IMG/VR virus record: IMGVR_UViG_3300027816_000051 | Coordinates: 62,001 to 126,000 of that record | Reading direction: 5' to 3' (one strand) | DNA length: 64,000 bases | Part shown: one piece after another, positions 38,672 through 64,000 of the stretch | How positions within the stretch are numbered: position 1 is the first letter of the stretch | Layout of the letters: every line of letters begins with the position of its first letter | Position numbers and translations under genes: made by a program | Notes under the pieces: generated by a model | The model's input: only the letters and a program-made list of their open reading frames with translations | Database searches by the model: none | What the model was told of the DNA's origin: nothing

Positions 38672-38672
38672 T

Positions 38673-40672: not shown

Positions 40673-40696
40673 TTTTCATATTTATTATAAAAAAAC

Positions 40697-41614
40697 ATGG
40701 CAGTAGGTAGTTACGGTATAATTAGACCATCAGATGTGTCACCCGAAGACGTTGAAATTTATTTTCATTACGTTGCGGATAGAAATAGCACTTCGACTGT
40801 TACTCTTAAGAAATTAAGTTCAGCTGAAGTATTAACCCCTGTTTATCATAATTCGAACACCACGGATGATACTTCAGCACCTAATGTTGAAATCTTAGGT
40901 GGATTGTACAACTTAAAATTAACCGCATCCGATTTTGCGGATTTAGGTGTATACACACTCCATATAAGACCAAAACAAATAAGAACTTCAATTACTGATT
41001 GTGGAATTTTAGCGTCTCTACCTTCAGTTAGAGGATTGGTCATTGACTTATCCAATGTTCCTGCTGATGATAGAAATAAATTTACACCACAAGGACTTGT
41101 TGGATATAGAATTGAGTACATTAATTCATCTGACAATAAAAAAATTCCAAATTTTTATAGAATCGTAACATCTTCGTTCTACTGTACACCAATTGTTTCA
41201 AATTTAACAAGTACATCACAAAAAGCTATCAGATATCAGTATAGTGAACAGGCAACCAATTTGATGTTTTTAACAGTAACACCATCTTCAGCACCAACAA
41301 ATAAACCAAATACGGTTCCATTTATTGGTGTACCATCACAAAAAATCATATTAACAAACACATATTTAAATCCCACCACAATTGAGGTAGAAATGGTTGA
41401 ACATGATGCTTCAACATTGGCACATGCTCTTTATGGTAATCAAAGTAAAGCGGTTTCACAAGGTATCTATACCATCTATGACAATAATAATAACATCTAT
41501 AGACAATACAATCTTTACGAAGTTAAAGACGAATTTAATGAAACATTATATGAGATTCGTGAAGAAAGAAATGACGTAGACGAAACCTTAAACTTTGATA
41601 CTATAACAGAATAA
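40697..41614 (+). CDS. putative virion structural protein
   Basis: 305 aa, TATTTAT upstream, TAATG-coupled to the next gene. Confidence 0.65.
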   Translation: MAVGSYGIIRPSDVSPEDVEIYFHYVADRNSTSTVTLKKLSSAEVLTPVYHNSNTTDDTSAPNVEILGGLYNLKLTASDFADLGVYTLHIRPKQIRTSITDCGILASLPSVRGLVIDLSNVPADDRNKFTPQGLVGYRIEYINSSDNKKIPNFYRIVTSSFYCTPIVSNLTSTSQKAIRYQYSEQATNLMFLTVTPSSAPTNKPNTVPFIGVPSQKIILTNTYLNPTTIEVEMVEHDASTLAHALYGNQSKAVSQGIYTIYDNNNNIYRQYNLYEVKDEFNETLYEIREERNDVDETLNFDTITE

Positions 41615-44600: not shown

Positions 44601-45858
44601 TTATTGCGACTCAAACAGTGGATGTACATTAGTGAGTGATGTGTTTTTTGAAGTAATTGGATACAAAACAGGTATCCAACAAGGTTCAACATGGCCATTT
44701 AACATTTATGCTAATTGTGTAAGTGGAACAAATGAAAATGCGGATGTTTACATTCAAAAAGTTAGTGATTGTGTATATAAATTAACTGGTTTTTCAGAAA
44801 ATGATGTAATAGATTTTAATATTGTAGATGCAGCAAATAAAGAAGTAAAATTCAAAATTGAAGGTCTACAACCCAAAATTGAACATGACCCATGTCCAAC
44901 ACCATCAGGAAAAAGTCACGTAGAATTATTTAGTATTGTTGGTTACCAAGGAACAATATCATCCCCAATTTCAGTTGTTTCAGGTGCAACATATTGTGAC
45001 AATTACACAGGTTACACAATACAACCAAAAGTTGAATACAAATCAAACTTTAACTATGGTTTAAAATGTGACTCTATAGTTTTAGTAGTTGATAGCGGAT
45101 TAACCATTGACAACCAAACTACAGATGACAATATTGAAAGTTATATTAGTGGTGGTACGATAAGTGGTAAAAGTGTTTGTGATTTAAATGTTGGGGAATA
45201 TGTTTTATCTGCATCTTACAAACAATGTACAGAATATAGTCACCAACAAATTGTGAATGGACCTGTATCAGGGTATTCATTTACGTACAACTATCAAAAA
45301 CTTGAAATTACAGACATTGAATGTTTAGCATCAATCAAGAAAAGTATCATTACAGGATTAACCCAAAATAATACTTATGAAGTTTTTGAAGTTTTACCAA
45401 CAACACAACTAAGAGTTTATACAAATAGAATCATTGAAAATTTTGGAACACCTACAAATAGTGTTTACTTTTTTGACGATAGGTTCCCAGAGGAATTACA
45501 AAAAAAACCAACAGATTTTATTGAACCTTGTTGTGACCATCCGAAAGAATTATATAACCATGGGGATTATTTAATAAACAAATATGGTAAAACCATAGAA
45601 GTAATTGATGTCGACTTAAATTATTGCGATACAGGATTATACTTCAATCTAAATTTTGAATTAGACAATACACCACTAACTGATGAATTTGTTGTTGTTT
45701 TCAATGGAAATAACAGCGACCAAATTCTGATGAAACACAAATACGATAAACATCCAAATATTGGATTCAACCTCGGTCAATATTATATCGATGCCAACCA
45801 TTGTCCTACAGAACCAACTAATGAGGAATTAAGTAGTTCCATTTTTGATTGTCCATGA
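41614..45858 (+). CDS. baseplate wedge / tail protein (T4 gp7 / P2 gpI-like core) with a Cys-rich C-terminal extension
   Basis: LPDVLLKNLAENLG...YRRLLINLAHIYKSKGTKSSIDFFLKFLG matches the gpI/gp7-like pattern. Confidence 0.65.
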   Translation: MARRKVPSQASSGAETFNDFLVGRQITDGSSALTNTVFALDKSIPDKDSKNFTSNPFSQFLTLDTLKEVEGIQTTSATPRKKRTDEVRFKGNKKYADKSLFGSLTSRILVSLTRIINKFPGGISILSDSPIGVSNYSASGITYNDSTNTTTFYIERSKIFNPFDLVFVEPNSVVKPETENELRNFYSSYTKYVVVTNNTPYPILEYSEPNTNNRIYLKVYGQPFTGSTYSENLLIRPNDGLVEEFFEGLDDLEESLLNRETNPIYTSSFKVPRDVQDNSKTSLVDVVITWPISNDGYNIQITGFDYDLYVGKLKDIADEIDVYKSNLMVRFLAAPQLFEFDTEDKRAESVFQLYGQSFDSVKKYIDNIAYMRNVSYDGINNLPDVLLKNLAENLGLSTLNLFDENSLNDVLYSRLQSNYDGVSTGTNLIEAEYEFYRRLLINLAHIYKSKGTKSSIDFFLKFLGAPEPLIRIDEYIYKVTSIPSSFNLQQDIYDAIQGNKRYSYATFDSTGFTYSKVYYSASTTFDREGYPVDEKTGLPRRAYNETENIFFGKGSGWYDITLSHRTPLVLDSSNSILTGNTKTIKTKNKNYTYGEEYFDLYRTLPGLDTGYELVSAVDNKDGKPIEDDYLLILNRKNIGIYISPSRGIDYDIFRQSRELLISFGTNTLLPQTGKTFAEFLDTFIHGLVTNSNKIRYKKNYIQLEDVYRDYISQTTGFTPYNQINVIEFVNKLSPYWPQLVEQLVPSTTQWTGGNLIENNVFGRPKYQYRYDCQPLEFIEELYPDFENVIEEDLENILGEENNFRGLINLTGVTYYPVIEIDGTVYGGADYTGLTSSMYVIVSGTSNTSNSAKLFDAQPFTGCTSGVTSGDTVNLSLICDYKDYLEPDVTKIKELWLSALSVLIDDVTITRNSAGYEPYSAFTGTTGQTYFSETIPLIKYTTYTDENGVEKVKFSSVKLGPNECSVVDYFDYRFDADYKITKNTNGISVKVYTDNTVYCDSNSGCTLVSDVFFEVIGYKTGIQQGSTWPFNIYANCVSGTNENADVYIQKVSDCVYKLTGFSENDVIDFNIVDAANKEVKFKIEGLQPKIEHDPCPTPSGKSHVELFSIVGYQGTISSPISVVSGATYCDNYTGYTIQPKVEYKSNFNYGLKCDSIVLVVDSGLTIDNQTTDDNIESYISGGTISGKSVCDLNVGEYVLSASYKQCTEYSHQQIVNGPVSGYSFTYNYQKLEITDIECLASIKKSIITGLTQNNTYEVFEVLPTTQLRVYTNRIIENFGTPTNSVYFFDDRFPEELQKKPTDFIEPCCDHPKELYNHGDYLINKYGKTIEVIDVDLNYCDTGLYFNLNFELDNTPLTDEFVVVFNGNNSDQILMKHKYDKHPNIGFNLGQYYIDANHCPTEPTNEELSSSIFDCP

Positions 45859-45977
45859 TAAAAACTGTAAAAATAGACGTTGACAATACCCGAATAAATG
45901 AGTATATTTTTATAATAAAAATAGATATAGATAAGACTGTAGATTTAAATGGCATTAATAAAAATAAACACAGGTAA
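45855..45977 (+). CDS. possible 40-aa bridging mini-ORF
   Basis: ATGA overlap with the upstream stop. [40 protein letters not shown] overlaps the start of the giant gene. Confidence 0.3.
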   Translation: MIKTVKIDVDNTRINEYIFIIKIDIDKTVDLNGINKNKHR

Positions 45978-48900
45978 TTTTGATGGTGAAATTGGTGTTA
46001 TCACATTTTATCCTTGTACTGGCGGTACCTTGAATTTAGGTACTGTCGTGATGCCATATTATTACGACACAAACTACTACTTAGGTACTTACTCAGTTTA
46101 TTTTCCGTCACTTGATAAAACTTGTGTGGCTGAGATTCCTTGCCCTACACCTTCACCTACACCTTCACCAACACTTACACCATCATTAACACCAACACCA
46201 ACAACCTTTACTTCAAATACCCCAACCCCAACAGTTACCAAAACCCCTACTGTTACACCTACGGTTACAAAAACACCTACTGTTACCCCAACCAATACTA
46301 TCACTCCAACAAATACTCCTACGAATACCGTAACTCCGACTAATACTCCAACAAACGAGCCTACAGTTACCCCAACTGAAACTCCTACAGTTACTCCAAC
46401 TAACACAGTAACTCCAACCAATACCCCAACAAATACCCCAACGGTTACCCCAACTGAAACTCCTACAGTTACCCCAACTAACACAGTAACTCCAACCGAA
46501 TCACCAGCCAACACACCTACTGTAACTCCTACGAATACAGTTACACCAACCGAGACACCAACTGTTACTCCGACCGAAACTCCAACTGTAACCCCAACAA
46601 ATACGGTAACCCCAACCAATACACCAACTGAAACACCTACCAACACCCCAACAAATACAGTTACCCCTACCGAAACTCCAACTGTAACTCCAACAAATAC
46701 GGTAACCCCTACCGAAACACCTACCAATACACCAACTCATACAGTAACCCCTACCGAAACACCAACCAATACCCCAACTAATACACCGACTGAAACACCC
46801 ACTAACACCCCAACAAATACTGTTACCCCAACTAATACACCAACCGAAACACCAACCGAAACACCAACCAATACCCCAACCAACACCGTAACTCCAACTG
46901 TTACCCCAACTGTTACCCCAACTGTAACTCCAACCAATACTGTTACCCCAACTAATACACCAACCGAAACACCAACCGAAACACCAACCAATACTCCAAC
47001 CAACACCGTAACCCTAACCGTTACCCCTACCGAAACACCAACCAACACCCCAACTAATACTCCGACTAACACAGTAACACCAACACTGAGTCCAACCGTT
47101 ACCCCTACCGAAACACCTACCAATACCCCAACCAACACCATAACACCAACTAACACTCCGACTAATACCTCAACTGTAACTCCAACCAATACTGTAACTC
47201 CAACCAATACACCCACTGTAACACAAACTGAAACACCTACCCTAACACCAACAAATACTGCAACCGTTACACCAACTCAAACCCCAACCAATACTCCTAC
47301 CAATACTGTTACACCAACGGTTACCCCAACTAACACTCCAACTGTAACTCCAACAAATACGGTAGCTCCAACTAATACACCTACAAATACACCAACCGAA
47401 ACACCAACAAATACCCCCACCAACACACCAACAAATACTCCCACAGAAACACCAACACTTACACCAACCAACACCGTAACCCCTACCAATACAGTCACAC
47501 CAACCAATACTGTTACAGTGACTCCAACAGAAACTGTGACACCAACTAATACACCTACAAACACCCCAACTAATACACCAACAAATACGGTTACACCTAC
47601 GAATACTCCAACCAACACAGTAACTCCAACAAATACTCCAACTAACACTCCAACATTAAGTCCTACCAATACCGTAACTCCTACCAACACCCCAACAAAC
47701 ACACCGACGAATACAGTAACTCCAACTCAGACACCTACAAATACTCCTACAAATACCGTTACACCAACCAATACCCCAACCAATACCCCAACCAACACCG
47801 TAACTCCAACAAACACTCCTACCAACACTCCTACAAACACTCCCACAAATACCGTAACTCCAACCAACACCGTAACTCCGACTAATACACCTACAAACAC
47901 ACCAACGAATACTGTGACTCCTACATTGAGTCCTACGGTAACACCAACTAACACCGTAACACCAACCAATACTCCAACCAATACACCTACCAATACTGTG
48001 ACTCCTACATTGAGTCCTACGGTAACACCAACTAACACCGTAACACCAACCAATACTCCAACTAACACGCCGACCAACACTCCTACTAACACTGTAACAC
48101 CAACATTGAGTCCAACAGTGACTCCAACCAATACAGTTACCCCCACAAACACCCCGACAAATACTGTAACTCCAACCAATACTGTAACTCCAACAAATAC
48201 ACCAAGTGTAACTGTGACGGTTTCACCAACACCAGCACCTTCTTGTGACATTGATTATACAATGTTACCCTCACCAACTCCAACGAGCACCCCAACACCC
48301 ACCAATACTCCAACGGTAACACCAACCAACACTGTAACACCATCCGTTACATTAACCAATACTCCCACAAACACACCAACCAATACAGTAACTCCTACTA
48401 ACACCCCAACTAATACACCAACAAAAACTGTTACACCAACTTTAACTCCAACAAATACTCCAACTAATACTGTAACACCAACCAATACACCAACAAACAC
48501 TCCTACCAATACAGTTACTCCTACATTGAGTCCAACAGTTACTCCTACCAATACTGTTACCCCAACCAATACTCCTACCAATACCCCAACCAATACAGTT
48601 ACACCTACATTGACTCCAACAGCGACCCCAACCAACACCGTAACCCCTACAAATACCCCAACATTAAGCCCCACCAATACTCCAACCAACACCGTAACCC
48701 CTACAAATACTGTAACACCAACGAATACCCCAACCAACACTCCGACAAACACCCCAACAAACACTGTAACACCAACCAACACTCCAACAAACACTGTAAC
48801 ACCGACCAATACTCCAACAAATACCCCTACTAATACTGCTACTCCTACAAATACACCAACTAATACTCCTACCAATACGGTAACCCCTACAAATACACCA

Positions 48901-51900
48901 ACTAACACTCCTACCAATACGGTATCCCCAACACTGACACCTACTAACACCCCTACGAACACCGTAACACCAACAAACACACCAACTAACACACCAACTA
49001 ATACTGTAACACCAACTAACACTCCTACCAACACCCCAACCAACACAGTTACTCCTACCAATACGCCAACTAATACTCCTACCAATACGGTAACGCCAAC
49101 ATTGAGTCCAACAGTGACTCCAACCAATACCGTTACACCAACTCAAACCCCTACAAATACCCCAACTAACACCGTAACACCAACCAATACACCTACGAAT
49201 ACCCCCACTAATACTCCAACAAATACCGTAACCCCAACAAACACGCCTACGAATACACCAACAGTAACCCCTACCAATACCGTAACCCCAACAAATACAC
49301 CGACGGTAACTCCGACCAATACAGTCACACCAACTAATACACCAACCAACACTCCTACCAATACGGCTACCAATACAGTTACTCCTACCAATACACCCAC
49401 AAATACACCAACAAATACGGTTACACCAACTAACACTCCTACTAATACTCCAACAAATACCGTAACACCGACACTGACACCTACAAATACCCCGACAAAC
49501 ACTCCAACCAATACAGTTACTCCAACCAATACTGTAACTCCTACCAACACCCCTACCAACACCCCAACAAATACTCCAACAAATACAGTCACCCCAACTA
49601 ATACTCCAACCAATACTGTCACCCCTACCAATACTCCTACAAACACCCCCACCAATACTGTCACCCCTACCAATACTCCTACCAATACTCCTACAAATAC
49701 AGTAACTCCAACTAACACCCCAACAAATACTCCAACAAATACAGTCACCCCAACCAATACTCCTACCAATACGCCCACCAATACTGTCACCCCTACCAAT
49801 ACTCCTACCAATACTTCTACAAATACAGTAACTCCAACTAATACTCCTACCAATACGCCTACTAATACTGTAACTCCAACCAACACCCCAACTGTAACTC
49901 CTACCAATACTGTTACACCAACAAACACTCCTACTAACACACCAACCAATACTGTTACACCAACAAACACTCCTACTAACACACCAACCAATACGGTAAC
50001 TCCTACCAACACCCCAACTAACACACCAACCAATACGGTAACTCCTACCAACACCCCAACTAACACCCCAACAAATACTGTTACACCAACAAATACTCCC
50101 ACCAATACCCCAACAAACACGGTGACTCCAACAAACACTCCTACTAACACCCCAACAAATACAGTAACACCAACATTGAGTCCTACAGTAACTCCTACGA
50201 ACACAGTAACTCCTACAAATACTCCCACAAACACTCCGACCAACACCGTTACACCAACAAATACCCCAACCAATACCCCGACAAATACAGTAACCCCAAC
50301 TAACACACCTACCAACACTCCAACTAATACAGTAACTCCCACATTAAGTCCAACTGTGACTCCTACTAATACTGTGACTCCTACAAACACTCCTACCAAC
50401 ACACCAACAAATACAGTTACACCTACATTGAGTCCAACAGTGACTCCAACCAGCACCGTAACCCCAACTAATACGCCAACATTAAGTCCTACCAATACTC
50501 CAACCAACACTGTTACTCCTACAAATACCGTTACACCAACCAATACACCTACCAATACCCCAACAAACACCGTAACCCCAACACTAACCCCAACTAACAC
50601 TCCAACCAATACTCCTACAAATACGGTATCTCCAACCAACACCGTAACCCCAACAAATACACCAACTAACACTCCAACCAATACTCCCACCAACACTGTT
50701 ACTCCAACCAACACCCCGACCAACACTCCGACTAATACAGTAACTCCTACCAATACCCCAACAAATACCCCAACAAATACAGTTACACCTACATTGAGTC
50801 CAACGGTGACTCCTACTAATACTGTAACTCCTACCAACACTCCGACCAACACACCAACCAATACTGTTACACCTACATTGAGTCCAACGGTGACTCCTAC
50901 TAATACTGTTACACCCACTAACACGCCAACTAACACTCCTACTAACACTGTAACACCAACTCAGACTCCCACGAACACGCCTACAAATACAGTAACACCT
51001 ACTAACACACCTACTAATACACCAACAAATACGGTAACACCAACCAACACCCCTACGAACACGCCGACTAACACCCCAACCAATACAGTCACACCAACTA
51101 ATACCGTAACTCCAACAAATACGCCAACCAATACTCCTACCAATACGCCAACCAATACCGTAACACCAACTCAGACACCGACAAATACCCCAACAAAAAC
51201 TGTTACACCAACATTGAGTCCGACTGTGACACCAACAAATACTGTTACTCCAACCAATACCCCCACCAATACTCCAACTAACACAGTAACCCCAACCAAT
51301 ACTCCAACTGTAACACCTACGAATACTGTTACACCTACAAATACACCGACGAATACACCAACCAATACGGTAACTCCAACCAACACCCCAACCAATACCC
51401 CAACTAGTACTGTTACACCAACATTAAGCCCGACACTAACACCAACCAATACAGTAACTCCAACATTGAGTCCGACTGTAACTCCAACAAGAACGGTTAC
51501 ACCTACTTTAACACCAACCAATACACCGACAAATACGGTAACCCCTACAAATACTCCCACCAACACCCCAACAAACACTCCAACCAATACAGTCACCCCA
51601 ACAAACACCGTAACACCAACCAACACCCCCACAAACACTCCAACCAATACTCCAACAAACACCGTAACACCAACCAACACACCAACCAAGACTGTAACTC
51701 CAACCAATACCCCAACCAATACTCCAACTAATACAGTAACCCCAACTAATACACCAACCAATACTCCAACGAACACCGTAACTCCAACCAACACCCCAAC
51801 CAACACTGTAACTCCAACAAATACACCTACAGTTACCCCGACTAACACAGTAACACCTACACTGAGTCCGACTGTAACCCCTACGAATACAGTTACACCA

Positions 51901-54900
51901 ACTCAGACACCTACAAATACTCCAACTAACACCGTAACTCCTACCAACACACCAACTAACACACCAACTAACACTGTTACACCCACAAATACACCAACCA
52001 ATACAGTTACTCCTACCAATACACCTACTAACACTCCAACTAACACAGTAACCCCTACCAATACCCCTACGAACACTCCTACTAATACAGTAACTCCTAC
52101 AAACACCGTAACACCAACCAACACACCAACCAATACTCCAACCAACACTGTCACCCCTACATTGAGTCCTACGGTAACTCCTACGAACACAGTTACCCCT
52201 ACTAACACACCGACTAAGACCGTGACTCCCACATTGAGTCCGACTGTGACTCCTACAAATACTGTTACACCAACTCAAACCCCTACGAATACACCAACTA
52301 ATACAGTTACACCAACTAATACACCTACAAACACCCCAACAAATACAGTTACACCTACAAATACCCCAACTAACACTCCAACCAATACAGTAACCCCTAC
52401 ACTGAGTCCAACCGTAACACCAACTAATACTGTCACACCCACGAATACACCAACCAATACCCCTACGAATACTGTAACCCCTACCAACACCCCTACTAAT
52501 ACTCCTACAAATACGGTTACACCAACTAACACTCCAACAAGAACGGTTACACCTACTTTAACACCAACCAATACACCGACAAATACGGTAACCCCTACAA
52601 ATACTCCCACCAATACCCCAACAAACACGGTGACTCCTACATTAACACCAACTGTAACTCCTACAAATACCGTAACACCAACCAATACTCCTACAAATAC
52701 TCCTACTAACACAGTAACACCTACCAATACCCCTACAAACACACCAACAAACACTGTAACTCCAACTAACACCCCTACTAATACTCCGACGAATACGGTA
52801 ACTCCAACCAATACCCCAACAAACACACCTACCAACACCGTAACACCTACAAATACTCCTACTAAAACTGTGACTCCCACATTGAGTCCAACAGTTACAC
52901 CTACCAACACCGTAACACCTACAAATACTCCCACAAATACCCCTACTAACACAGTAACACCAACAAATACACCAACCAACACTCCAACTAATACCGTTAC
53001 CCCAACTAACACACCTACAAATACACCAACAAATACTGTGACTCCTACATTGAGTCCAACAGTTACACCTACCAACACCGTAACACCTACAAATACCCCT
53101 ACCAACACCCCAACAAATACAGTAACACCTACATTGAGTCCGACTGTGACTCCAACTAACACCGTTACGCCAACTAACACACCTACCAACACTCCAACTA
53201 ACACCGTAACCCCTACCAGCACCCCCACAAGAACCGTTACACCTACATTAACTCCAACCAATACCCCTACTAATACCGTAACCCCAACAAATACCCCAAC
53301 CAATACCCCTACTAATACCGTAACCCCAACAAATACCCCAACAAACACTCCAACTAATACCGTAACCCCAACAAATACCCCAACAAACACTCCAACTAAT
53401 ACCGTAACCCCTACCAACACCCCCACAAGAACCGTTACACCTACATTAACTCCAACCAACACACCAACTAATACTGTAACCCCAACCAACACTCCTACAA
53501 ACACTCCAACGAATACAGTTACACCAACCAATACACCAACTAACACCCCAACCAACACTGTAACTCCAACATTGAGCCCTACAGTGACTCCCACTAATAC
53601 AGTTACACCAACTAACACACCAACCAATACCCCAACCAACACCGTAACTCCAACAAACACCCCTACTAAAACTGTAACTCCCACATTGAGCCCTACGGTA
53701 ACCCCAACAAACACTGTTACTCCAACCAACACCCCAACTAATACTCCAACTAATACTGTTACTCCAACCAACACCCCAACCAACACCCCAACTAATACTG
53801 TTACACCGACCAACACACCAACGAATACTATAACTCCTACTAATACTCCTACCAAAACTGTTACACCAACTCTAACCCCAACGAATACACCGACCAATAC
53901 TCCTACAAACACAGTAACCCCAACCAATACCGTAACACCAACTAACACTCCAACCAACACTGTAACTCCAACTAATACACCAACCAACACCCCAACTAAT
54001 ACTCCGACAAACACTGTTACGCCAACCAATACACCAACAAAAACTGTCACACCAACTTTAACCCCAACCAACACCGTAACACCAACCAATACCCCGACTA
54101 ATACACCTACAAATACTGTTACTCCAACTAATACACCTACAAACACTCCAACCAACACCGTAACCCCAACCAATACACCAACTAATACGGTGACTCCCAC
54201 ATTGAGTCCTACGGTAACTCCTACAAATACTGTAACCCCTACTAATACTCCTACCAAAACTGTTACACCAACTCTAACCCCAACGAATACTCCTACCAAT
54301 ACTGTAACCCCTACCAATACTCCTACCAATACTGTAACCCCTACCAATACTCCTACCAATACTCCAACAAATACTGTTACCCCAACTCAGACACCTACTA
54401 ACACTCCAACGAATACAGTCACACCAACCAACACACCAACTAATACTGTAACTCCTACATTGAGTCCTACGGTAACTCCGACCAATACGGTAACCCCAAC
54501 AAACACACCAACTAACACACCAACTAATACTGTAACGCCAACTAATACACCAACAAAAACTGTTACACCAACTTTAACTCCAACCAATACCCCAACTAAT
54601 ACTGTAACACCTACCAATACACCAACAAACACTGTTACGCCAACTTTAACTCCAACCAATACCCCGACCAATACCCCAACAAATACCGTTACTCCAACCA
54701 ACACAGTTACCCCGACCAATACCCCAACTAAGACAGTCACCCCAACTCAGACTCCCACCAATACTCCAACCAATACCCCCACAAACACTGTAACTCCAAC
54801 AAACACTGTTACGCCAACAAATACTCCAACTAATACGGTAACACCGACTAACACTGTAACGCCGACCAATACCGTAACCCCCACTAACACTGTAACTCCA

Positions 54901-57900
54901 ACGAATACAGTTACACCGACCAATACTCCAACAAGAACTGTTACGCCTACCTTAACCCCTACAAATACTCCAACAAATACGGTAACTCCGACCAACACAC
55001 CAACTAACACACCAACTAACACAGTTACCCCGACTAACACCCCAACCAATACGGTAACCCCTACTAACACACCTACTAATACACCAACCAAGACTGTTAC
55101 TCCTACATTAACTCCTACCGTTACTCCAACGAATACAGTTACACCGACCAATACCCCGACTAATACTAATACCCCTACTAATACACCTACAAACACTCCT
55201 ACTAACACAGTAACCCCAACCAATACACCAACAAAAACTGTCACACCAACTTTAACCCCAACAAATACACCGACCAACACACCAACTAATACAGTGACTC
55301 CAACCAATACTGTTACCCCAACAAACACTCCAACCAAGACTGTTACTCCTACATTAACACCAACCAACACTCCGACCAATACGGTAACCCCTACAAATAC
55401 CCCAACTAACACCCCAACAAACACTGTTACGCCAACTAATACACCAACCAAGACTGTTACTCCTACATTAACTCCAACCAATACCCCTACTAATACCGTA
55501 ACCCCAACAAATACCCCAACAAACACTCCAACCAATACTGTAACACCAACGAATACTGTTACCCCAACATTGAGTCCTACTAATACCCCAACTAATACTG
55601 TAACACCCACCAACACACCCACCAACACACCAACAAATACTGTTACACCAACCAATACACCAACAAAAACCGTAACACCTACATTAACACCAACAAACAC
55701 TCCTACAAACACCCCAACAAATACCGTTACTCCAACCAACACCGTAACCCCAACTAACACACCAACTAATACGGTGACTCCCACCAATACCGTTACACCT
55801 ACAAACACTGTTACACCTACTAATACTGTTACACCTACTAATACTGTAACACCAACTAATACACCAACCAAGACTGTAACACCTACATTAACTCCAACCA
55901 ATACTCCAACAAACACCGTAACACCAACTCAGACACCGACTAATACTCCTACAAATACCGTAACTCCTACCAATACACCAACAAAAACTGTCACACCAAC
56001 TTTAACTCCAACAAATACCCCAACCAATACTGTTACACCAACTCAAACCCCTACGAATACACCAACTAATACAGTTACACCAACTAACACAGTCACCCCG
56101 ACCAACACACCTACCAATACCCCAACCAATACTGTTACACCTACCTTAACTCCTACAAATACTCCTACAAATACAGTAACCCCAACCAATACACCAACAA
56201 AAACCGTAACACCTACATTAACACCAACAAACACTCCTACAAACACTCCCACGAATTCCGTTACTCCTACTAATACTGTTACCCCCACTAACACCCCAAC
56301 TAACACAGTAACGCCGACTAATACTGTTACTCCAACCAATACCGTAACTCCTACAAATACGGTAACCCCAACCAATACTGTAACGCCAACTAATACCCCA
56401 ACCAAGACAGTTACACCAACTCAGACACCTACTAATACACCAACCAACACTGTAACACCAACTAACACACCTACCAACACTCCAACTAACACCGTAACTC
56501 CTACTAATACACCAACAAAAACTGTTACACCAACTCTAACACCAACAAATACCCCTACGAACACTGTAACTCCAACCAATACACCAACAAAAACTGTTAC
56601 ACCAACTTTAACTCCGACCAACACGGTAACCCCAACCAATACTCCTACTAATACTCCTACTAATACAGTAACCCCCACCAATACTCCGACCAATACGGTG
56701 ACTCCCACATTGAGTCCTACAGTTACCCCTACGAACACCGTTACACCAACAAATACCCCAACCAAGACTGTAACTCCTACATTAACTCCTACAAATACCC
56801 CTACTAATACTGTAACCCCTACCAATACTCCAACTAATACACCTACTAAAACTGTCACCCCTACAGTTACTCCTACTAATACAGTTACCCCAACCAACAC
56901 TCCCACAAACACTCCTACAAACACTGTAACCCCTACATTGAGTCCTACAGTTACCCCTACGAACACCGTTACACCAACAAATACCCCAACCAATACTCCG
57001 ACAAATACAGTTACACCGACCAATACGCCCACAAATACTCCTACTAATACTGTTACACCCACTAACACCCCAACAAATACTCCAACAAATACAGTTACAC
57101 CGACCAATACACCCACAAATACACCAACAAATACAGTTACACCGACCAACACACCAACAAAAACTGTAACACCAACTTTAACTCCAACCAATACACCCAC
57201 AAATACACCAACAAATACGGTTACACCAACAAATACAGTAACCCCAACTAATACACCGACTAAGACAGTCACCCCAACCAATACCCCAACAAATACTCCA
57301 ACCAACACACCAACTAACACGGTTACCCCAACCAATACTGTTACACCAACAAACACACCCACTAATACACCAACCAAGACTGTAACTCCTACATTGAGTC
57401 CTACAGTTACTCCTACTAATACAGTAACACCCACCAACACACCAACTAACACGGTTACCCCAACCAATACACCAACCAAGACTGTTACACCTACATTAAC
57501 ACCTACTAATACTCCGACCAATACTGTAACCCCTACATTGAGTCCTACAGTTACCCCTACGAACACCGTTACACCAACAAATACTCCTACAAACACCCCA
57601 ACCAAGACTGTTACACCTACATTAACACCTACTAATACTGTTACACCTACATTAACACCAACCAATACTCCAACGAACACTCCTACCAATACTCCTACAA
57701 ACACGGTAACACCAACAAACACTGTTACACCAACAAATACTCCTACAAACACTCCGACCAAGACTGTTACACCTACATTAACACCTACTAATACTCCTAC
57801 GAATACTGTTACCCCAACAAATACTCCAACAAGAACTGTTACTCCTACATTAACACCGACCAATACTCCTACGAATACTGTTACCCCAACAAATACTCCA

Positions 57901-60900
57901 ACAAATACACCTACTAATACAGTTACACCAACTAACACACCTACTAATACAGTTACACCAACCAACACCCCAACCAAGACTGTTACACCTACCTTAACTC
58001 CTACAAACACCCCAACCAATACTCCAACAAACACTGTTACGCCTACTAATACCCCGACTAATACGGTAACTCCTACAAATACCCCAACCAATACCCCAAC
58101 AAATACCGTTACTCCAACTAATACACCAACAAAAACTGTTACACCAACTCTAACCCCAACAAATACTCCAACCAACACACCAACTAATACGGTTACCCCA
58201 ACAAATACTGTTACCCCCACAAATACTCCAACCAAGACTGTCACCCCTACCAATACTCCTACAAACACCCCAACCAATACGGTAACTCCTACAAATACCC
58301 CAACCAATACTCCAACAAACACTGTTACGCCTACTAATACTCCGACTAATACAGTTACACCAACTCAGACACCTACTAATACACCAACAAAGACAGTTAC
58401 ACCAACTTTAACACCGACCAATACAGTTACACCTACATTGAGTCCTACAAATACTCCTACCAATACAGTAACACCAACAAATACACCAACTAACACCCCA
58501 ACAAATACCGTTACACCAACGAATACACCAACTAACACTCCGACTAACACTGTAACCCCAACTAATACCGTAACCCCAACAAGAACACCAGCAGCTACTG
58601 TTAGTCCAACAAATACTCCAACAAATACTCCTACGAATACTGTTACACCAACCAATACACCTACCAATACACCTACTAATACTGTTACACCAACCAACAC
58701 ACCAACTAAAACGGTTACACCTACGTTCACACCAACCAATACAGTAACTCCGACTAACACACCCACAAACACCCCAACCAATACCGTTACACCAACCAAT
58801 ACACCTACTAATACTCCAACCAATACTGTTACACCAACAAATACTCCTACTAATACTGTTACACCAACAAGAACACCAGCAGCTACTGTTAGTCCAACAA
58901 ATACTCCAACAAATACTCCTACGAATACTGTTACACCAACCAATACACCTACCAATACACCTACTAATACTGTTACACCTACTAACACTCCAACCAAAAC
59001 TGTAACACCAACCAATACTCCTACTAATACTGTTACACCCACAAACACCCCAACAAACACTCCAACAAATACAGTCACACCAACTAATACACCTACAAAT
59101 ACACCTACTAACACAGTCACACCCACCAACACACCGACCAATACAGTGACTCCAACAAGAACTCCGGCCGCCACTGTTAGTCCTACCCTTACACCCACAA
59201 ACACCCCAACCAATACCGTTACACCAACCAATACACCAACAAGAACCGTCACACCAACTTTTACACCTACTAACACTCCAACGAATACAGTCACACCAAC
59301 AAATACTCCAACCAATACGCCGACTAATACTGTTACACCAACCAATACCCCAACCAATACTGTTACTCCAACAAGAACTCCGGCAGCCACTGTTAGTCCT
59401 ACCCTTACACCAACCAATACCCCAACCAATACTCCAACAAATACAGTAACACCAACCAACACTGTCACACCGACCAATACTCCTACTAATACACCAACAA
59501 AAACTGTTACACCAACTTTTACACCAACCAATACTCCAACCAATACTGTAACACCAACCAATACTCCTACAAACACCCCAACAAACACCGTTACTCCTAC
59601 CAATACTCCTACCAATACTGTAACTCCTACGAGAACACCAGCGGCTACTGTTAGTCCAACATTAACACCGACTAACACACCAACAAACACACCTACTAAT
59701 ACTGTTACTCCAACAAATACAGTTACACCGACCAACACCCCTACTAACACCCCAACCAACACTGTTACTCCAACCAACACCCCAACTAATACTCCAACAA
59801 ATACGGTAACTCCAACCAATACCCCTACTAATACCGTAACCCCGACAAGAACACCAGCTGCCACTGTTAGTCCAACCTTAACTCCAACTAATACTCCAAC
59901 CAACACTCCAACTAATACAGTCACCCCTACGAATACAGTTACACCTACCAATACACCAACAAGAACAGTTACACCAACTTTAACTCCAACTAATACACCA
60001 ACCAACACTGTAACACCAACTAACACCCCAACTAATACTCCAACAAATACGGTAACTCCAACAAATACCCCAACAAATACTGTTACACCAACAAGAACAC
60101 CAGCGGCTACTGTTAGTCCAACATTAACACCAACAAATACACCTACCAATACCCCAACGAACACAGTAACCCCCACAAATACTGTTACCCCAACCAATAC
60201 CCCAACAAGAACTCCAGCAGCCACTGTTAGTCCTACGGTAACTCCAACAAATACCCCAACAAATACTGTTACACCAACAAGAACACCGGCTGCCACAGTT
60301 AGTCCAACCGTAACACCAACTAACACTCCAACAAATACTGTTACACCAACATTGACACCAACCAAAACAGTAACCCCAACGGCTAGTCCTCAGTATGTTG
60401 CTGCTAGATTTGAATCATGTTGTCCTGGTGACACCAATGTTTATTATGGTCAAGTACCATTAGGTACATTGTTAGGTACGGTATTTTATTTACAAGACAT
60501 TCAGTTATGTGCAACGTATGTGCAACAGGTAGGACCTGGAGGTACGATTTACACTACTGTTCAGACAAGTTGTGCACAATGTTTAGGAGAAACTCTAAAT
60601 TTTTGTCCATCACCAACCCCGACACCAACACCAACCAGAACTGTTACACCTACGAATACGGTAACCCCTACCAATACACCAACAAGAACAGTTACACCAA
60701 CTCTCACACCAACCAATACCCCAACAAATACTGTTACTCCAACAAGAACTCCAGCCGCCACTGTTAGCCCTACGGTAACCCCTACCAATACACCAACAAG
60801 AACAGTTACACCAACTTTAACCCCGACTAACACCCCAACCAATAGTGTTACTCCTACGAGAACACCATCCGTAACCCCTACCAATACACCAACAAAAACA

Positions 60901-62367
60901 GTTACACCAACTTTAACTCCTACATTAACACCAACAAGCACAGTAACACCATCACCATCCTTACAGGTTGGTTATGTTTATTTATTACCATGTTGTGATG
61001 GTGGTATTTTAGGTAATACTATTTCTTATTTAAGTATAACAACTAATTTGACCTATGTTCAAAGCGGTATTTCACAAGGTCAAACTATTGTTATAAATGG
61101 ATGTTGTTATTTTGTTGAAGGTTATAGTCAAACCTACTCACCACCAAACTTTAGTGGGGTTGACGGGTATTATCCACCATCATCATTTAGTGTTGATACA
61201 TGTGAAACATGTATTGGAGCTAACCCATGCGCCACTTGGATTTTCGATTTACAAAGATGTGGATGTTGTGGTACAACAGGACAATATACAATTCAATTTG
61301 GTTGTCAAAATGGATTTAACCCAAATCTTTTAGTAAACCGTTATATATCAATTAATGGTTGTTGTTATTTTGTTACAAACTCAGTCGGACCAGGAGTACC
61401 TGGTTCCGCAATCACTGCGTATGGTACATACAATACATGTACTGAATGTGAAACTTATCACCCTTGTCCTTCACCAACCCCAACAGTTACACCAACAGTT
61501 ACACCAACTTTAACCCCAACAAAAACACCGACAAATACACCAACAAGGACAGTTACTCCAACTTTAACACCAACCAATACTCCTACAAATACACCAACCA
61601 AGACTGTAACTCCAACCTTTACCCCTACAAATACACCAACCAAGACTGTAACTCCAACCTTTACCCCTACAAATACTCCAACCAAGACTGTAACTCCAAC
61701 CTTTACCCCTACAAATACTCCAACAAGGACAGTTACTCCAACTTTAACACCAACCAATACTCCTACAAATACACCAACCAAGACTGTAACTCCAACAAAC
61801 ACTCCAACAAACACTCCAACACCATCTCCGGTTTCAAATCCGTCATCAACCCCAACCCCAACTCCAACTCCGACCCCAACCCCAACTCCACCATGTGTTT
61901 GTGAGTCATATATTATTACAGGATTAGGACCTGGTAATATAGTTAACTATACCACTTGTTGCGGTGGAGGAACACCCACAGAAATACTTGACCCAAATGT
62001 GTACCCAGCAAGTGGTACAATTGAGATATGTTCATGTAGTATTCCAAGTGTATTAGGTCCTTATGGTGGGGAGATAACGTATGATGGTGCTTGTGGTGAT
62101 TGTTTGTGTACAGACTTTTTTGTTGATATTAATGATTTAACAGCCTCAGATGATAATCAAGTATACTTTGCATACCAATGTTGTGATGGTACATTCACAA
62201 CACAAGGTTATAACGCCCCTGGTAATTATAGCGTTTGTCTTATGAGAGTGACAAATGTGTTTATATTGTTTAGAGGAAACTTCGTACCACCAATATATAC
62301 TTCGCAATATACATACGGTACTGGTTGTGGTGATTATTGTAACACATTTTGTGGAGAAGCATGTTAA
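45949..62367 (+). CDS. giant mucin-like Thr/Pro-repeat protein (5472 aa) with Cys-rich terminal modules; putative virion fibre
   Basis: Uninterrupted 16.4-kb frame. It has a unique N-domain of about 65 aa, about 4750 aa of TPTN/TVTP repeats, then Cys-rich modules separated by shorter PT linkers. It lies right after the baseplate block. The function is inferred. Confidence 0.8.
46144..60390 (+). repeat. degenerate coding tandem repeat (12- and 18-nt units encoding TPTN and TPTNTV)
   Basis: ACN-CCN-ACN-AAY and ACN-GTN units with varied third positions. The + strand is extremely A/C-rich and G-poor. Confidence 0.95.
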
Positions 62368-62411: not shown

Positions 62412-64000
62412 ATGCCAGCACAAATAATAACATTTCAAAATTGTTTAGACCCAGCGTCATACTATGATTTTGTCGTCGATGACAGTTTAGTATTATCGGG
62501 TGACACGATTTTTGCTGATTACCAATGTTGGTCTTCAACAGGAAATGTCGGAGGTGGACCGTCAGGTACGGTTATTTTTAGTGGTTATACAACCTGTGAA
62601 CAATGTAACGACGATTTTAATGGGTGGCAATTTGAACATTGCCAAATACCAGGGGCATTTGTTTACTTTGGTTTAAAAAATTCAGAAGTTAATCAGTATT
62701 TCCAAAGTACAGGTGCAACAATTTCTTATGATGGTACATGTTACAACTATACAGGAGTTTATGAACAAGGCACTGGTAGCACCACTTACAATTATACTGT
62801 TGCACAATTAATTTCTGAAAATGCTCTTTTTACAAATTGTATTGACTGTTTAACACCACCAAGTCCAACTCCTACCCCTACTCCAACACCCACACCAACT
62901 TTATGTTACTCAGGTATAACCGATTCACCAAATTGGTATTATACGGACTGTTGTGGTGTATATCATAGTGGTTCATTTTCACCAACATATGTTTGTTACG
63001 ACCCGAGTTACCCATATGCAGGGATATCTTTCAATGGTTTCTGTACTGTAGTTTGTCCGAGTGTGACCCCAACTCCAACACCCACATTAACACAAACTCC
63101 TTCCGAAACTCCTTCCGAAACCCCAACCCCAACAAATACTGTAACTCCAACAAAAACTCCAAGTCTAACTCCGACACCTTCGGTTACACCAACAAATACA
63201 CCCACAAATACACCGTCAAGTACGTTAGGTTCGACACCTTCGGTTACACCAACAAATACACCCACAAATACCCCTTCATTAACACCTTCGGTAACTGTTA
63301 GTGTAACACCCACAGTAACCCCATCACCTTCACTAGTACCTACAGGATGTACTCAATATACATTCTCATTACACCCAATTTATTTTTTAACGCAAGCCGG
63401 ACCTTATAATATTTCGGGAACAACAACAGGAGGAACTATAGTATTAATTGCAACTGGTGTGACAACATCTCAATTATTATCTGGGTATACCGCACTTGTG
63501 TGTTATTCAATAACAACATTTACAGTTCAAAGTACTGGTACGTGTACTAATTCTGTGAATTTTACATTACCTGTACCTATTGTATCTCCAACCCCGACCC
63601 CAACAAAAACCCCAACACCAAGTCCATCCGGTAATCCAGTTGCGACCCCAAGTGTAACACCTACTAATACCGTAACCCCGACCCTGACCCCAACACCATC
63701 AGGTGGTTGTAGTGATTCAGTTAGAAATACTCTTGCCGCAACGAATTCATATTCTGCCGTTGGTAGACAAGGTATGGTTTATTCATCATCAAATAACAAA
63801 GCATACGTTCTAAACGCATCAAGTGTTGTACAATCTTTTGTCCCAAATTCAACAAGTTTAACAAATGAATTTACATGGTCAGGAAGTAGTTTATTATTAG
63901 GATATAACTCAACTAACAACAAATTATACAGTTGGGAATCATCATTTCCTGTTAAAATGTTAATAAGAAATTTAAACACAAACACAACATCGTCAATATC
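62412..64000 (+). CDS. 3'-truncated Cys-rich / Pro-Thr-linker protein, possibly entering a beta-propeller (absent from the ORF track)
   Basis: Manual translation from ATG 62412 gives MPAQIITFQNCLDP...CEQC...CIDC...TPTPTP...YTDCCG...VYSSSNNKAYV...GYNSTNNKLY, open to the window end. TATTTAT at 62388-62394. Confidence 0.85.
   Translation, partial: MPAQIITFQNCLDPASYYDFVVDDSLVLSGDTIFADYQCWSSTGNVGGGPSGTVIFSGYTTCEQCNDDFNGWQFEHCQIPGAFVYFGLKNSEVNQYFQSTGATISYDGTCYNYTGVYEQGTGSTTYNYTVAQLISENALFTNCIDCLTPPSPTPTPTPTPTPTLCYSGITDSPNWYYTDCCGVYHSGSFSPTYVCYDPSYPYAGISFNGFCTVVCPSVTPTPTPTLTQTPSETPSETPTPTNTVTPTKTPSLTPTPSVTPTNTPTNTPSSTLGSTPSVTPTNTPTNTPSLTPSVTVSVTPTVTPSPSLVPTGCTQYTFSLHPIYFLTQAGPYNISGTTTGGTIVLIATGVTTSQLLSGYTALVCYSITTFTVQSTGTCTNSVNFTLPVPIVSPTPTPTKTPTPSPSGNPVATPSVTPTNTVTPTLTPTPSGGCSDSVRNTLAATNSYSAVGRQGMVYSSSNNKAYVLNASSVVQSFVPNSTSLTNEFTWSGSSLLLGYNSTNNKLYSWESSFPVKMLIRNLNTNTTSSI

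What the first reader, a model, noticed from the sequence alone, without database searches (positions are those of the whole stretch)
45949..62367. 5472-aa mucin-like phage protein, a possible micron-scale tether
Seen: about 4750 consecutive residues are almost only T, P, N and V, with no stop over 16.4 kb. The repeat is capped by a small N-domain and C-terminal Cys-rich modules, has no obvious signal peptide, and lies next to baseplate genes. Inference: if extended like polyproline II (about 0.3 nm per residue), the linker would span roughly 1.4 micrometres, far longer than the tail. It could be a flexible capture line, a drag or buoyancy element, or a glycosylated shield. Spending a quarter of this window on it implies selection. 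Shorter PT linkers with adhesin-like heads in ORF 1-2304 and ORF 62412+ suggest a family-wide linker-plus-head display system.
Basis: partly seen in the sequence, partly recalled or inferred. Interest (0 to 1): 0.85.

Follow-up and report, generated by a model that had tools for sequence, protein, structure and literature searches.

The report
Giant phage tether protein, mostly linker
An uncultured jumbo phage carries a real, selected 16.4-kb gene encoding a small anchor domain, a 4,750-residue threonine-proline thread and fast-evolving cysteine-rich tips; it is most likely a very long, probably sugar-coated, flexible line for catching host cells.

Summary
ORF 45949..62367 (+) encodes 5472 aa, and residues 66-4813 are a strict Thr-x alternation (T 48.5%, P 21%, N 16%, V 9%).

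It is not an assembly artefact. Six contigs from different metagenomes carry the identical 16,419 nt, and no 127-mer is repeated. 85% of codon differences between repeat blocks are synonymous.

The 65-aa N-domain defines a phage-only family of at least 452 clusters. Members have the N-domain, then a Pro/Thr linker (normally 10-150 aa), then Cys-rich or lectin-like modules. This gene is the extreme member. Close relatives have linkers of about 2.0k and 2.5k residues, and probably about 4.6k in a third lineage. An in-frame 5378-aa allele also exists.

Between close relatives the N-domain is 86-89% identical and the C-terminal domain only 32-35%, which is the pattern of a receptor-binding fibre. 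The same phage carries a 15-gene glycosylation operon 29-41 kb downstream.

Best reading: a virion-anchored, probably O-glycosylated, flexible tether that displays binding modules. The 1.5 µm figure is contour length only; the expected equilibrium reach is about 40-170 nm. Virion attachment, glycosylation and ligand are all inferred.

The parts
45880..45908 (+). Sigma-70-like promoter (TTGACA, 17 nt, TATATT), 41 nt upstream of the start codon
   Evidence: 11 of 12 consensus matches. Both hexamers and the spacing are kept in six relatives whose upstream gene is 74-97% identical. Function not shown.
45949..62367 (+). Giant ORF: 5472 aa, 564 kDa, pI 8.8
   Evidence: Identical in 6 independent contigs.
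45949..46143 (+). N-domain (aa 1-65): six-strand beta sandwich, the conserved putative docking module
   Evidence: The profile finds 452 clusters, with the domain nearly always at residues 1-67. AF2 mean pLDDT 85.4. 86-89% identical in close relatives. Only weak Ig/FN3-like fold matches.
46144..60387 (+). Main linker (aa 66-4813): (Thr-x)n with Pro every 4 or 6 residues
48229..48270 (+). Short non-repeat island with the linker's only Cys (aa 761-774, core SCDIDYT)
   Evidence: Conserved in the L031 ortholog at aa 608-620 and absent in L022. Role unknown.
60388..60609 (+). Cys module M1 (aa 4814-4887, 6 Cys)
   Evidence: The same module type occurs in 11 family proteins. 47% identical in orthologs.
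60610..60954 (+). Second PT linker (aa 4888-5002)
60955..61470 (+). Paralogous Cys modules M2 and M3 (aa 5003-5174, 16 Cys)
   Evidence: The M2 profile hits M3. 52% identical in L031 and missing in L022.
61471..61893 (+). Third PT linker (aa 5175-5315)
61894..62364 (+). C-terminal domain (aa 5316-5472, 16 Cys): all-beta, fast-evolving putative binding tip
   Evidence: AF2 pLDDT 86.7, pTM 0.80. No structural neighbour in PDB or BFVD. Only 32-35% identical in relatives whose neighbouring gene is 80-97% identical.
41614..45858 (+). Upstream 1414-aa structural-size protein, syntenic partner of the giant ORF
   Evidence: Found in 74 viral loci at 48-100% identity. An N-domain gene follows it in close relatives. 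Only weak baseplate-wedge leads. No Pfam, PHROG or PDB hit.
62412..64000 (+). Start of an 854-aa protein made of Cys modules and PT linkers, first of four such downstream genes
   Evidence: Full genes of 854, 282, 116 and 973 aa are read in L001. No Pfam hits.
1..2304 (+). C-terminal 767 aa of an 844-aa protein: unknown N-domain, Ser/Thr/Pro linker, DUF5122 beta-propeller
   Evidence: DUF5122 E 1.3e-82. Full gene at L141 6915..9449, just upstream of the tail sheath.

Best explanation
The gene encodes a structural accessory fibre of a jumbo myovirus, built on a modular plan shared by hundreds of phage lineages.

- The 65-aa N-terminal beta-sandwich docks the protein on the virion, probably at the baseplate periphery.
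- The (Ser/Thr-x)n, Pro-rich segment is an unfolded, extended spacer. It is probably O-glycosylated by the phage's own glycosyltransferases.
- The Cys-rich modules at the far end, above all the C-terminal domain, bind a variable ligand on or around the host cell.

In this lineage the spacer has grown to about 4,750 residues. The binding tips therefore explore a volume of roughly 40-170 nm radius at rest and can pay out to about 1.5 µm under tension. That would let the particle make and keep a first, reversible contact with a cell, a colony matrix or a sheath before the baseplate engages.

Shown: the gene is real; selection acts on the repeat's amino acids; the domain family exists; the conserved-N, variable-C gradient; linker length varies; glycosylation genes sit in the same genome.

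Inferred: virion attachment and its site, glycosylation of this protein, disorder of the linker, and binding by the tip.
For: Gene reality and translation:
- Identical 16,419-nt ORF in 6 contigs.
- No repeated 127-mer.
- 0 stops in the + frame against 15-727 in the others.
- 1059 synonymous against 182 nonsynonymous codon differences between repeat blocks.
- Conserved promoter-like site.

Fibre-like logic. Identity to the L022 / L031 phages:
- upstream gene 96.5 / 79.6%
- N-domain 86 / 89%
- M1 47 / 47%
- M2M3 absent / 52%
- C-domain 35 / 32%

Family:
- The N-domain profile hits 452 clusters, almost always at residues 1-67. 106 of the top 150 have a PT linker directly after it.
- Distal domains in 50 members include Laminin_G_3, DUF285, BspA-type LRR, Fib_succ_major, PKD, a DUF5122 propeller and a phage tail Collar domain.

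Position:
- The gene lies after the gp25- and gp6-like baseplate genes and the large structural proteins.
- Other jumbo-size contigs show the same layout.

Linker grammar is kept in four lineages while the x residues differ: Ser/Thr at every second residue in 90-99% of cases, Pro 20-22% spaced 4 or 6, no Gly.

Glycosylation capacity:
- A 15-gene operon has four GT2-type transferases, UDP-GlcNAc 2-epimerase, an NDP-sugar epimerase/dehydratase and two FkbM-type methyltransferases.
- One of its GT2 genes (the one used as the query) is 100% identical on contigs carrying the giant ORF, and 95% identical in the L022 phage.
- Glycosyltransferases lie within 10 kb of N-domain genes in two unrelated phages.

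Length is labile but kept in frame:
- A 5378-aa allele differs by deletions of 84 and 198 nt.
- Orthologs are 2940 and 2737 aa.
- A further lineage has at least 2893 linker residues.
Against: - There are no proteomic, transcript or imaging data, so virion association is inferred from gene order and family logic only.
- The N-domain also occurs in otherwise unrelated phages. It also occurs as a stand-alone 67-aa ORF between terminase and portal. Its partner need not be a baseplate protein.
- No recognised tail-fibre domain is present in this protein.
- The folds of both ends match nothing informative.
- The glycosylation operon is 29-41 kb away. It could instead modify host surface polymers or other virion proteins.
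- Selection on amino-acid content does not prove selection on length.
- A flexible 4.7k-residue chain adds hydrodynamic drag and costs about 2,300 Thr per copy. The capture gain from a larger radius may be modest for free-living small cells.
Confidence: 0.5

Rival explanations
1. The protein forms a virion coat or 'hair'. Many copies make a glycosylated polymer brush that shields the particle from proteases, grazers, aggregation or non-host adsorption, or that alters drag. The distal modules are secondary.
For: The composition is mucin-like, and a large glycosylation operon sits in the genome. Hairy jumbo myoviruses exist, for example CBB with 119-nm tail hairs (PMC5259590). Large DNA viruses glycosylate their surface fibrils with their own enzymes (PMC4691112, listed).
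Against: A shield does not explain conserved distal Cys modules whose tip evolves much faster than the anchor. It also does not explain lectin- and adhesin-type heads in family members. Only one N-domain gene was found in about 115 kb of this phage.
Confidence: 0.15
2. The extreme length has no function of its own. This is an ordinary short-linker fibre gene in which slippage or unequal recombination has inflated the linker nearly neutrally. The protein works as its 300-1700-aa relatives do.
For: The typical first linker in the family is 10-150 aa. Length differs about 2.4-fold among close relatives, and in-frame indel alleles coexist. The x residues of the repeat drift freely between lineages.
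Against: Silent sites between repeat blocks are almost randomised: 48% of same-amino-acid codon pairs differ. Best-match identity is about 78% both near and far. The array is therefore old and has been retained, not a recent burst. At least four lineages keep linkers of 2,000 aa or more. The gene takes 5.7% of a 288-kb genome whose capsid volume is limited.
Confidence: 0.15
3. The protein is not part of the virion. It is made late and released at lysis as a soluble glycoprotein (decoy, matrix former or aggregation agent), or it acts inside the cell.
For: There is no direct evidence of incorporation. The sigma-70-like promoter would suit expression by the host polymerase.
Against: The gene is embedded in the tail/baseplate module, co-oriented with structural genes. 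Its conserved N-terminal module is shared with proteins carrying tail-fibre-type heads, including a tail Collar domain. It has no signal peptide.
Confidence: 0.1
4. The linker is not a random coil but folds, alone or as an oligomer, into a regular rod such as a Thr-faced beta-solenoid with about 14 residues per turn. That would be about 160 nm long, an ordinary long tail fibre in disguise, possibly with a TxT ice- or carbohydrate-binding face.
For: The array has a dominant 42-nt (14-aa) period of 50-86 copies. The strict Thr-x alternation puts all Thr on one face of an extended strand.
Against: Pro makes up 21% and occurs every 4-6 residues in an irregular order. There is no Gly and almost no core-forming hydrophobic or aromatic residue. 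Relatives replace Asn by Ser, Val or Ile without keeping a fixed period.
Confidence: 0.05
5. The ORF is an assembly artefact, or a non-coding satellite array that happens to be open.
For: At least 16 contigs end inside the repeat. Four contigs carry out-of-frame deletions at the longest exact repeat. The JGI pipeline calls minus-strand ORFs there instead.
Against: Six assemblies agree base for base over 16.4 kb. MEGAHIT k141 contigs traverse the array, and no 127-mer is repeated. Third-position scrambling with amino-acid conservation is seen. One frame runs unbroken from a conserved N-domain to conserved C-terminal modules.
Confidence: 0.03

Closest known systems
Pro/Thr-rich ('PT box') interdomain linkers of bacterial and fungal glycoside hydrolases
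   Same: Composition (Pro plus Ser/Thr). Role of connecting folded binding or catalytic modules. Extension by Pro content and by O-glycans (PMC3490864).
   Different: Those linkers average 30-42 aa, with a maximum of 75 in that survey. This one is 4748 aa, more than 100 times longer. It has a strict Thr-x alternation, sits in a phage protein made in the cytoplasm, and has no signal peptide.
Phage tail fibres and receptor-binding proteins (for example T4 long tail fibres)
   Same: Location in the tail/baseplate module. Conserved N-terminal end and rapidly diverging C-terminal tip. Modular exchange of distal domains.
   Different: Known fibres are rigid trimeric beta-structured rods of defined length. 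Here the shaft would be an unfolded low-complexity chain. No fibre-type domain is detectable in this protein.
Whisker or hair appendages of 'hairy' jumbo myoviruses (vB_PcaM_CBB, PhAPEC6)
   Same: A jumbo myovirus with thin appendages of about 120 nm ending in tiny globular structures (PMC5259590). The geometry is like a thread plus head.
   Different: No sequence link was tested or found. The proteins forming those hairs are not assigned in the passages I read. The hosts and the phage lineage differ.
Mucins and lubricin (PTS-repeat, densely O-glycosylated extended polymers)
   Same: Thousands of Pro/Thr/Ser residues in tandem repeats flanked by Cys-rich folded domains. O-glycans expand such chains (PMC11238335, listed).
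   Different: Mucins are eukaryotic secreted proteins glycosylated in the Golgi. Here any glycosylation would be cytoplasmic and phage-encoded, and it is not shown. There is no sequence homology beyond composition.
Virus-encoded glycosylation of virion surfaces (giant-virus fibrils; mycobacteriophage capsid and tail glycosylation)
   Same: The viral genome carries its own sugar-nucleotide and glycosyltransferase genes (PMC4691112; PMC11256854; here).
   Different: The target of the operon in this phage is unknown. The operon is 29-41 kb from the giant gene.
Hoc-type Ig-like decoration proteins (bacteriophage adherence to mucus)
   Same: Small beta-sandwich accessory domains on virions that give weak, reversible adhesion and raise encounter rates (PMC6848219 and PMC6867891). 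The N-domain model has weak Ig/FN3-like matches.
   Different: In Hoc the Ig domains are the adhesin and bind external mucin. Here the phage itself would carry the mucin-like polymer, and the beta-sandwich is the conserved end.

Membership tests
Unnamed phage 'N-domain + PT linker + modules' family (defined here) | About 65-aa N-terminal beta-sandwich with the conserved ITFYPC-GG ... P-Y-Y ... G-Y ... TC ... PC pattern at residues 1-67 | tested here: met
   The profile of 10 sequences finds 452 clusters (226 at E<=1e-10), with the domain at the extreme N-terminus in nearly all of the top 150. The window ORF scores E 3.6e-29 against the 71-sequence profile, which includes it.
Unnamed phage 'N-domain + PT linker + modules' family (defined here) | Pro/Thr/Ser linker directly after the N-domain, then folded modules separated by further linkers | tested here: met
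   106 of 150 members have this layout. The window ORF does too, but with a first linker of 4748 aa against 10-150 aa. M1 and the second half of the C-domain recur in 11 family proteins each.
Phage tail fibre / receptor-binding protein | Encoded in the tail/baseplate morphogenesis module | tested here: met
   Sheath, tube, hub, gp25-like and gp6-like genes lie upstream on the same strand. Other contigs show the same layout.
Phage tail fibre / receptor-binding protein | Conserved virion-proximal end, hypervariable distal end | tested here: met
   N-domain 86-89% identical against C-domain 32-35%, in phages whose neighbouring gene is 80-97% identical.
Phage tail fibre / receptor-binding protein | Recognisable fibre, spike or collar domains, or a fibrous trimeric fold | tested here: not met
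   No Pfam or PHROG fibre family; the only PHROG hit lies on PT linker. No structural neighbour for either end. One of 50 family members carries a tail Collar domain.
Phage tail fibre / receptor-binding protein | Physical presence on the virion and binding to a host receptor | not testable with these tools
   Needs proteomics, imaging or adsorption assays.
Mucin-like domain | Long tandem Pro/Thr/Ser repeats | tested here: met
   4748 residues, Ser+Thr 49.8%, Pro 21.1%.
Mucin-like domain | Dense O-glycosylation | not testable with these tools
   Only capacity is shown: four GT2-type transferases and sugar-nucleotide enzymes in the same genome. There are no N-x-S/T sequons in the repeat (read from the [10 protein letters not shown] units).
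Mucin-like domain | Secretory route (signal peptide) | tested here: not met
   The N-terminus is the folded N-domain and has no basic or hydrophobic leader. This was judged by inspection; no predictor was run.
PT-box linker of carbohydrate-active enzymes | Short (tens of residues) Pro/Thr spacer between a catalytic domain and a CBM | tested here: not met
   Same composition, but 4748 aa against a mean of 30-42 aa. No catalytic or CBM domain was detected.
TxT-type ice-binding / beta-solenoid repeat proteins | Regular solenoid coil presenting aligned T-x-T motifs | not tested
   T-x-T is present throughout. However, Pro spacing is irregular (4 or 6), and Gly and core residues are absent. No structure prediction of the linker was run.

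The most novel reading that the evidence does not exclude
Phages of this lineage carry a new kind of adsorption organelle. It is a phage-encoded, phage-glycosylated mucin-like polymer thread with up to about 1.5 µm of contour, anchored by a portable 65-aa docking domain and tipped with novel-fold Cys-rich binding modules. It works by polymer physics (a large exploration volume, and pay-out under shear) rather than as a rigid fibre. Its reach is tuned in evolution by in-frame gain and loss of repeat units.
Probability: 0.3. Interest if true: 0.85.

Novelty: new variant of a known kind. Interest (0 to 1): 0.72.

Why it matters
If the thread is on the virion, it changes how far from its body a phage can sense and hold a host. 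It would also bring mucin-type polymer mechanics and viral self-glycosylation into phage adsorption.

There is a practical point as well. One widely used annotation pipeline replaces this gene with spurious opposite-strand ORFs, and short-read assemblies usually break inside it. This whole class of proteins is therefore systematically under-reported.

The 65-aa N-domain family (at least 452 clusters, none found in 185,579 prokaryote genomes) and the confidently modelled but unmatched C-terminal fold are concrete new targets for structural and binding studies.

Tried and rejected
- tblastn of the C-terminal 471 aa against 50,697 phage records gave no match.
- Pfam and PHROG scans of both ends gave nothing. 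PHROG 15511 hits fall on PT linker in all three proteins and were dismissed as compositional.
- PDB sequence search gave only a linker-to-linker hit.
- Whole-database word search with the C-terminal region returned 104 giant cellular surface proteins that match only through PT linkers. Their longest T/P/S run was 594 aa, so they are not relatives.
- Searches restricted to the C-domain or the N-domain among proteins of 3,000 aa or more found nothing. This is not evidence of absence, for two reasons. HMMER's bias filter removed the giant ORF itself in a local test. JGI records do not call the gene at all.
- The ESM Atlas gave only viral hypothetical clusters and weak baseplate leads for the upstream gene.
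- Fold searches of both models gave no match below E 0.1.
- The genome-contig scan for the N-domain returned 53 pattern matches, none confirmed.
- No tRNA genes were found in about 115 kb, so there is no sign of a dedicated Thr/Pro tRNA supply.
- No glycosyltransferase lies in the window or within 10 kb upstream or about 29 kb downstream of it. The operon lies further on.
- A first attempt at repeat-block identity was out of register and was discarded, then redone.
- Literature searches for PT-rich phage proteins and for Mel-JY01 found nothing relevant.
- Host and habitat were not determined.


Full report
**What is there.** The window is part of a myovirus genome of about 32% GC. On the + strand it carries a tail sheath, tube, baseplate hub, gp25-like and gp6-like wedge proteins, UvsX-like recombinase, DnaB-like helicase and ribonucleotide reductase. 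The nearest isolate by sheath is Microcystis phage Mel-JY01, at only 33% identity. Contigs carrying the locus reach 288 kb, so this is an uncultured jumbo-size phage. I did not determine host or habitat.

**The ORF.** ORF 45949..62367 is 5472 codons without a stop. The product is 564 kDa with pI 8.8.
- Residues 1-65 are a folded N-domain.
- Residues 66-4813 are a linker of T 48.5%, P 21.1%, N 15.7% and V 8.8%, with no Gly, 5 aromatic and 80 charged residues.
- The rest is Cys-rich modules M1 (6 Cys), M2 and M3 (16 Cys) and a C-terminal domain (16 Cys), separated by PT linkers of 115 and 141 aa.
- The linker is not merely T/P/N/V-rich. 99% of Ser/Thr have Ser/Thr two residues on, and Pro recurs every 4 (621 times) or 6 (357 times) residues, giving TPTN and TPTNTV units.

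**Is it real?** Several lines agree.
- Six IMG/VR contigs from different metagenome ids carry the identical 16,419 nt.
- At the DNA level the array is degenerate. The longest exact repeat is 116 nt, no 127-mer is repeated, and only 2.2% of 55-mers are non-unique. Each 150-nt block is only about 78% identical to its best match, whether near or far.
- Four contigs of one sample series carry 253-430-nt out-of-frame deletions that start and end at or near the two copies of the 116-nt repeat. I read these as misjoins.
- At least 16 further contigs simply end inside the array, as expected for short reads.
- Two ENA records whose names indicate MEGAHIT at k=141 call a 5378-aa gene from the same start. 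Against the window it has two in-frame deletions, 84 nt at ORF nt 2031 and 198 nt at nt 7314, plus one SNP in the first 10 kb, and its last 1,024 nt are identical. These account exactly for the 94 missing residues. No 127-mer is repeated, so a k=141 assembly cannot collapse this array. This is therefore a genuine length allele (inference).
- JGI annotation of the same DNA lists a chain of minus-strand ORFs instead of the gene. This explains why the protein is missing from protein databases.

**Is it translated and selected?** In the linker the + frame has 0 stops in 4749 codons, while the other five frames have 15-727. I compared each 150-nt block with its best in-register match. Of 2400 codon pairs, 1159 are identical, 1059 differ synonymously and only 182 differ non-synonymously; 81% of nucleotide differences are at third positions. 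Thr codons are used at ACA 0.34, ACC 0.28 and ACT 0.32. Silent sites are thus nearly randomised while the peptide repeat is held. That fits an old, maintained coding array and not a recent slippage burst. A sigma-70-like promoter (11 of 12 matches) lies 41 nt upstream and is conserved in relatives.

**Relatives.** The upstream 1414-aa gene is found in 74 viral loci.
- In the phage where that gene is 96.5% identical (L022), the ortholog is 2940 aa. Its linker is about 2,530 aa, rich in Ser and Val, and it lacks M2 and M3.
- At 79.6% identity (L031) the ortholog is 2737 aa with a linker of about 1,990 aa.
- In a third lineage (L134) the linker is open for at least 2893 codons and is then joined by one frameshift to M1, M2, M3 and the C-domain. 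On that contig the N-domain start and the stop are 15.8 kb apart, although 4.6 kb was not fetched.
- All four lineages keep the same grammar: Ser/Thr at alternate positions in 90-99% of cases, Pro 20-22% spaced 4 or 6, and no Gly. The x residues differ.
- Identity falls along the protein: N-domain 86 / 89%, M1 47 / 47%, M2M3 52%, C-domain 35 / 32%.

**The family.** A profile of the N-domain searched against 1.84 billion representative proteins finds 452 clusters (226 at E<=1e-10), with the domain at residues 1-67 in almost all of the top 150.
- 106 of the 150 continue directly into a PT linker, normally 10-150 aa, followed by beads of Cys-rich modules. 20 are the N-domain alone. The longest is 1727 aa.
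- Among 50 members, distal domains include DUF285, Fib_succ_major, a BspA-type LRR, Laminin_G_3, PKD, a DUF5122 propeller, a papain-like peptidase and a phage tail Collar domain.
- M1 and the second half of the C-domain recur in 11 family proteins each, and M2 and M3 are paralogs.
- The N-domain is shared by phages that have nothing else in common with this one. In one lineage it is a stand-alone 67-aa ORF between terminase and portal.
- It was not found in 185,579 prokaryotic species genomes.
- In other jumbo-size contigs the N-domain gene again follows two proteins of 1.2-1.6 kaa.
- In this phage the giant ORF is the only N-domain gene in about 115 kb.
- It is followed by four more proteins built from Cys modules and PT linkers, of 854, 282, 116 and 973 aa. 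One of these also varies in length between assemblies, 973 against 949 aa.
- The window's first ORF is the end of an 844-aa protein with a Ser/Thr/Pro linker and a DUF5122 propeller.

**Structures.** The N-domain model (71-sequence alignment) has pLDDT 85.4 and six strands. PDB matches are only weak Ig/FN3-like sandwiches, with best E 0.32. The C-domain model (12 sequences) is confident, with pLDDT 86.7 and pTM 0.80, and is all-beta. It has no neighbour in PDB (best E 0.73) or BFVD (best E 0.11).

**Glycosylation.** No glycosyltransferase lies in the window or close to it.
- Walking downstream found an operon of 15 co-directional genes on the opposite strand, 29-41 kb beyond the stop codon (L154 331..12440).
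- It holds Glyco_tranf_2_5 (E 2.9e-24), Glyco_tranf_2_4 (3e-15), two Glycos_transf_2, UDP-GlcNAc 2-epimerase, an NDP-sugar epimerase/dehydratase and two FkbM-type methyltransferases. Weak GT1 and GT-D signals are also present.
- One of its GT2 genes, used as the query, is 100% identical on 14 IMG/VR contigs. These include all six contigs that carry the identical giant ORF. It is 95% identical in the L022 phage.
- In two unrelated phages, glycosyltransferases lie within 10 kb of the N-domain gene: a GlcNAc-transferase family with an RXYLT1-like protein, and two GT7-plus-lectin proteins.
- This shows capacity, not that the linker is the substrate.

**How it most likely works.** The conserved-N, variable-C gradient, the tail-module position and the adhesin-type heads of family members point to one model. 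The N-domain docks on the virion and the distal modules bind something variable. From established knowledge of Pro-rich and O-glycosylated linkers (PMC3490864; PMC11238335), the spacer should be unfolded and extended.

Its contour length is 1.47 µm at 0.31 nm per residue. For a worm-like chain, however, the root-mean-square end-to-end distance is 36, 66, 121 or 171 nm for persistence lengths of 0.45, 1.5, 5 or 10 nm. 'Micron-scale' therefore holds only under tension. At rest the tips would sweep a sphere comparable with a tail length. I put 0.5 on this tethered-adhesin reading. The rivals are a shielding brush, a functionally neutral inflation of an ordinary fibre, a non-virion product and a folded rod.

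**Novelty.** PT linkers, modular fibres, hairy jumbo phages (PMC5259590) and virus-encoded glycosylation (PMC4691112) are all known. I found no description of several things seen here:
- a linker more than 100 times the usual length forming 87% of a phage protein;
- the N-domain family;
- the C-terminal fold;
- the pairing with a large phage glycosylation operon.

I class the finding as a new variant of a known kind. There is a 0.3 chance that it is a genuinely new type of adsorption device.

Noticed in passing
window 46098-60365, minus strand; L163 and L165: JGI gene calls replace the giant ORF with a chain of spurious minus-strand Gly/Val-rich ORFs (109-694 aa). As a result the protein is absent from JGI-derived protein sets. 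ENA records call one + strand gene of 5378 aa.
   Followed up: yes
L154 331..12440 (IMGVR_UViG_3300027816_000051, about 153.7-165.8 kb; outside the window): A 15-gene glycosylation operon with four GT2-type transferases, UDP-GlcNAc 2-epimerase, an NDP-sugar epimerase/dehydratase, two FkbM-type methyltransferases and several unannotated 200-270-aa proteins. Thioredoxin and glutaredoxin genes lie next to it.
   Followed up: partly
window 48229-48270: A 14-aa non-repeat island (core SCDIDYT) holds the only Cys of the 4748-aa linker. It is conserved in the L031 ortholog and absent in L022. It could be a cross-link, cleavage or docking site.
   Followed up: partly
L113 3580..3783: In a more distant phage the N-domain is a stand-alone 67-aa ORF that ends exactly where the linker would begin. 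It lies between terminase and portal, next to a 491-aa PT-linked repeat protein.
   Followed up: partly
ORF nt 12607-13386 = window about 58555-59334: Four IMG/VR contigs of one sample series have 253-430-nt out-of-frame deletions at the two copies of the longest exact repeat (116 nt, 288 nt apart). These are probably misassemblies.
   Followed up: yes
L139 4925..7774 against L140 4853..7774: The neighbouring PT/Cys protein is 949 aa in one assembly and 973 aa in another, so linker-length polymorphism is not confined to the giant gene.
   Followed up: no
window 1-2304; L141 6915..9449: An 844-aa protein just upstream of the sheath has an unknown N-terminal part, a linker of about 110 aa rich in Ser/Thr/Pro, and a DUF5122 beta-propeller (E about 1e-82).
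   Followed up: partly
L139 17172..19944; L142 17287..20152: Downstream of the window the phage encodes a ClpP-like protease, its own sigma-70-family factor, a Dam-type methyltransferase, an AAA protein, thioredoxin and glutaredoxin.
   Followed up: no
window 7544-20699 and 32787-45858: Nine large proteins in the tail module (277-2007 aa) have no Pfam, PHROG or PDB sequence match.
   Followed up: partly
window 46001-60000: GC rises to 0.42-0.45, against 0.30-0.36 elsewhere. GC skew is about -0.73 and AT skew +0.4 across the array, which follows from ACN/CCN/AAY codons.
   Followed up: yes
window 20954-21583: A 209-aa ORF has a sub-threshold match to the DEC-1 N-terminal low-complexity family (E 1.3e-6, below the cutoff). 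It is probably compositional.
   Followed up: no
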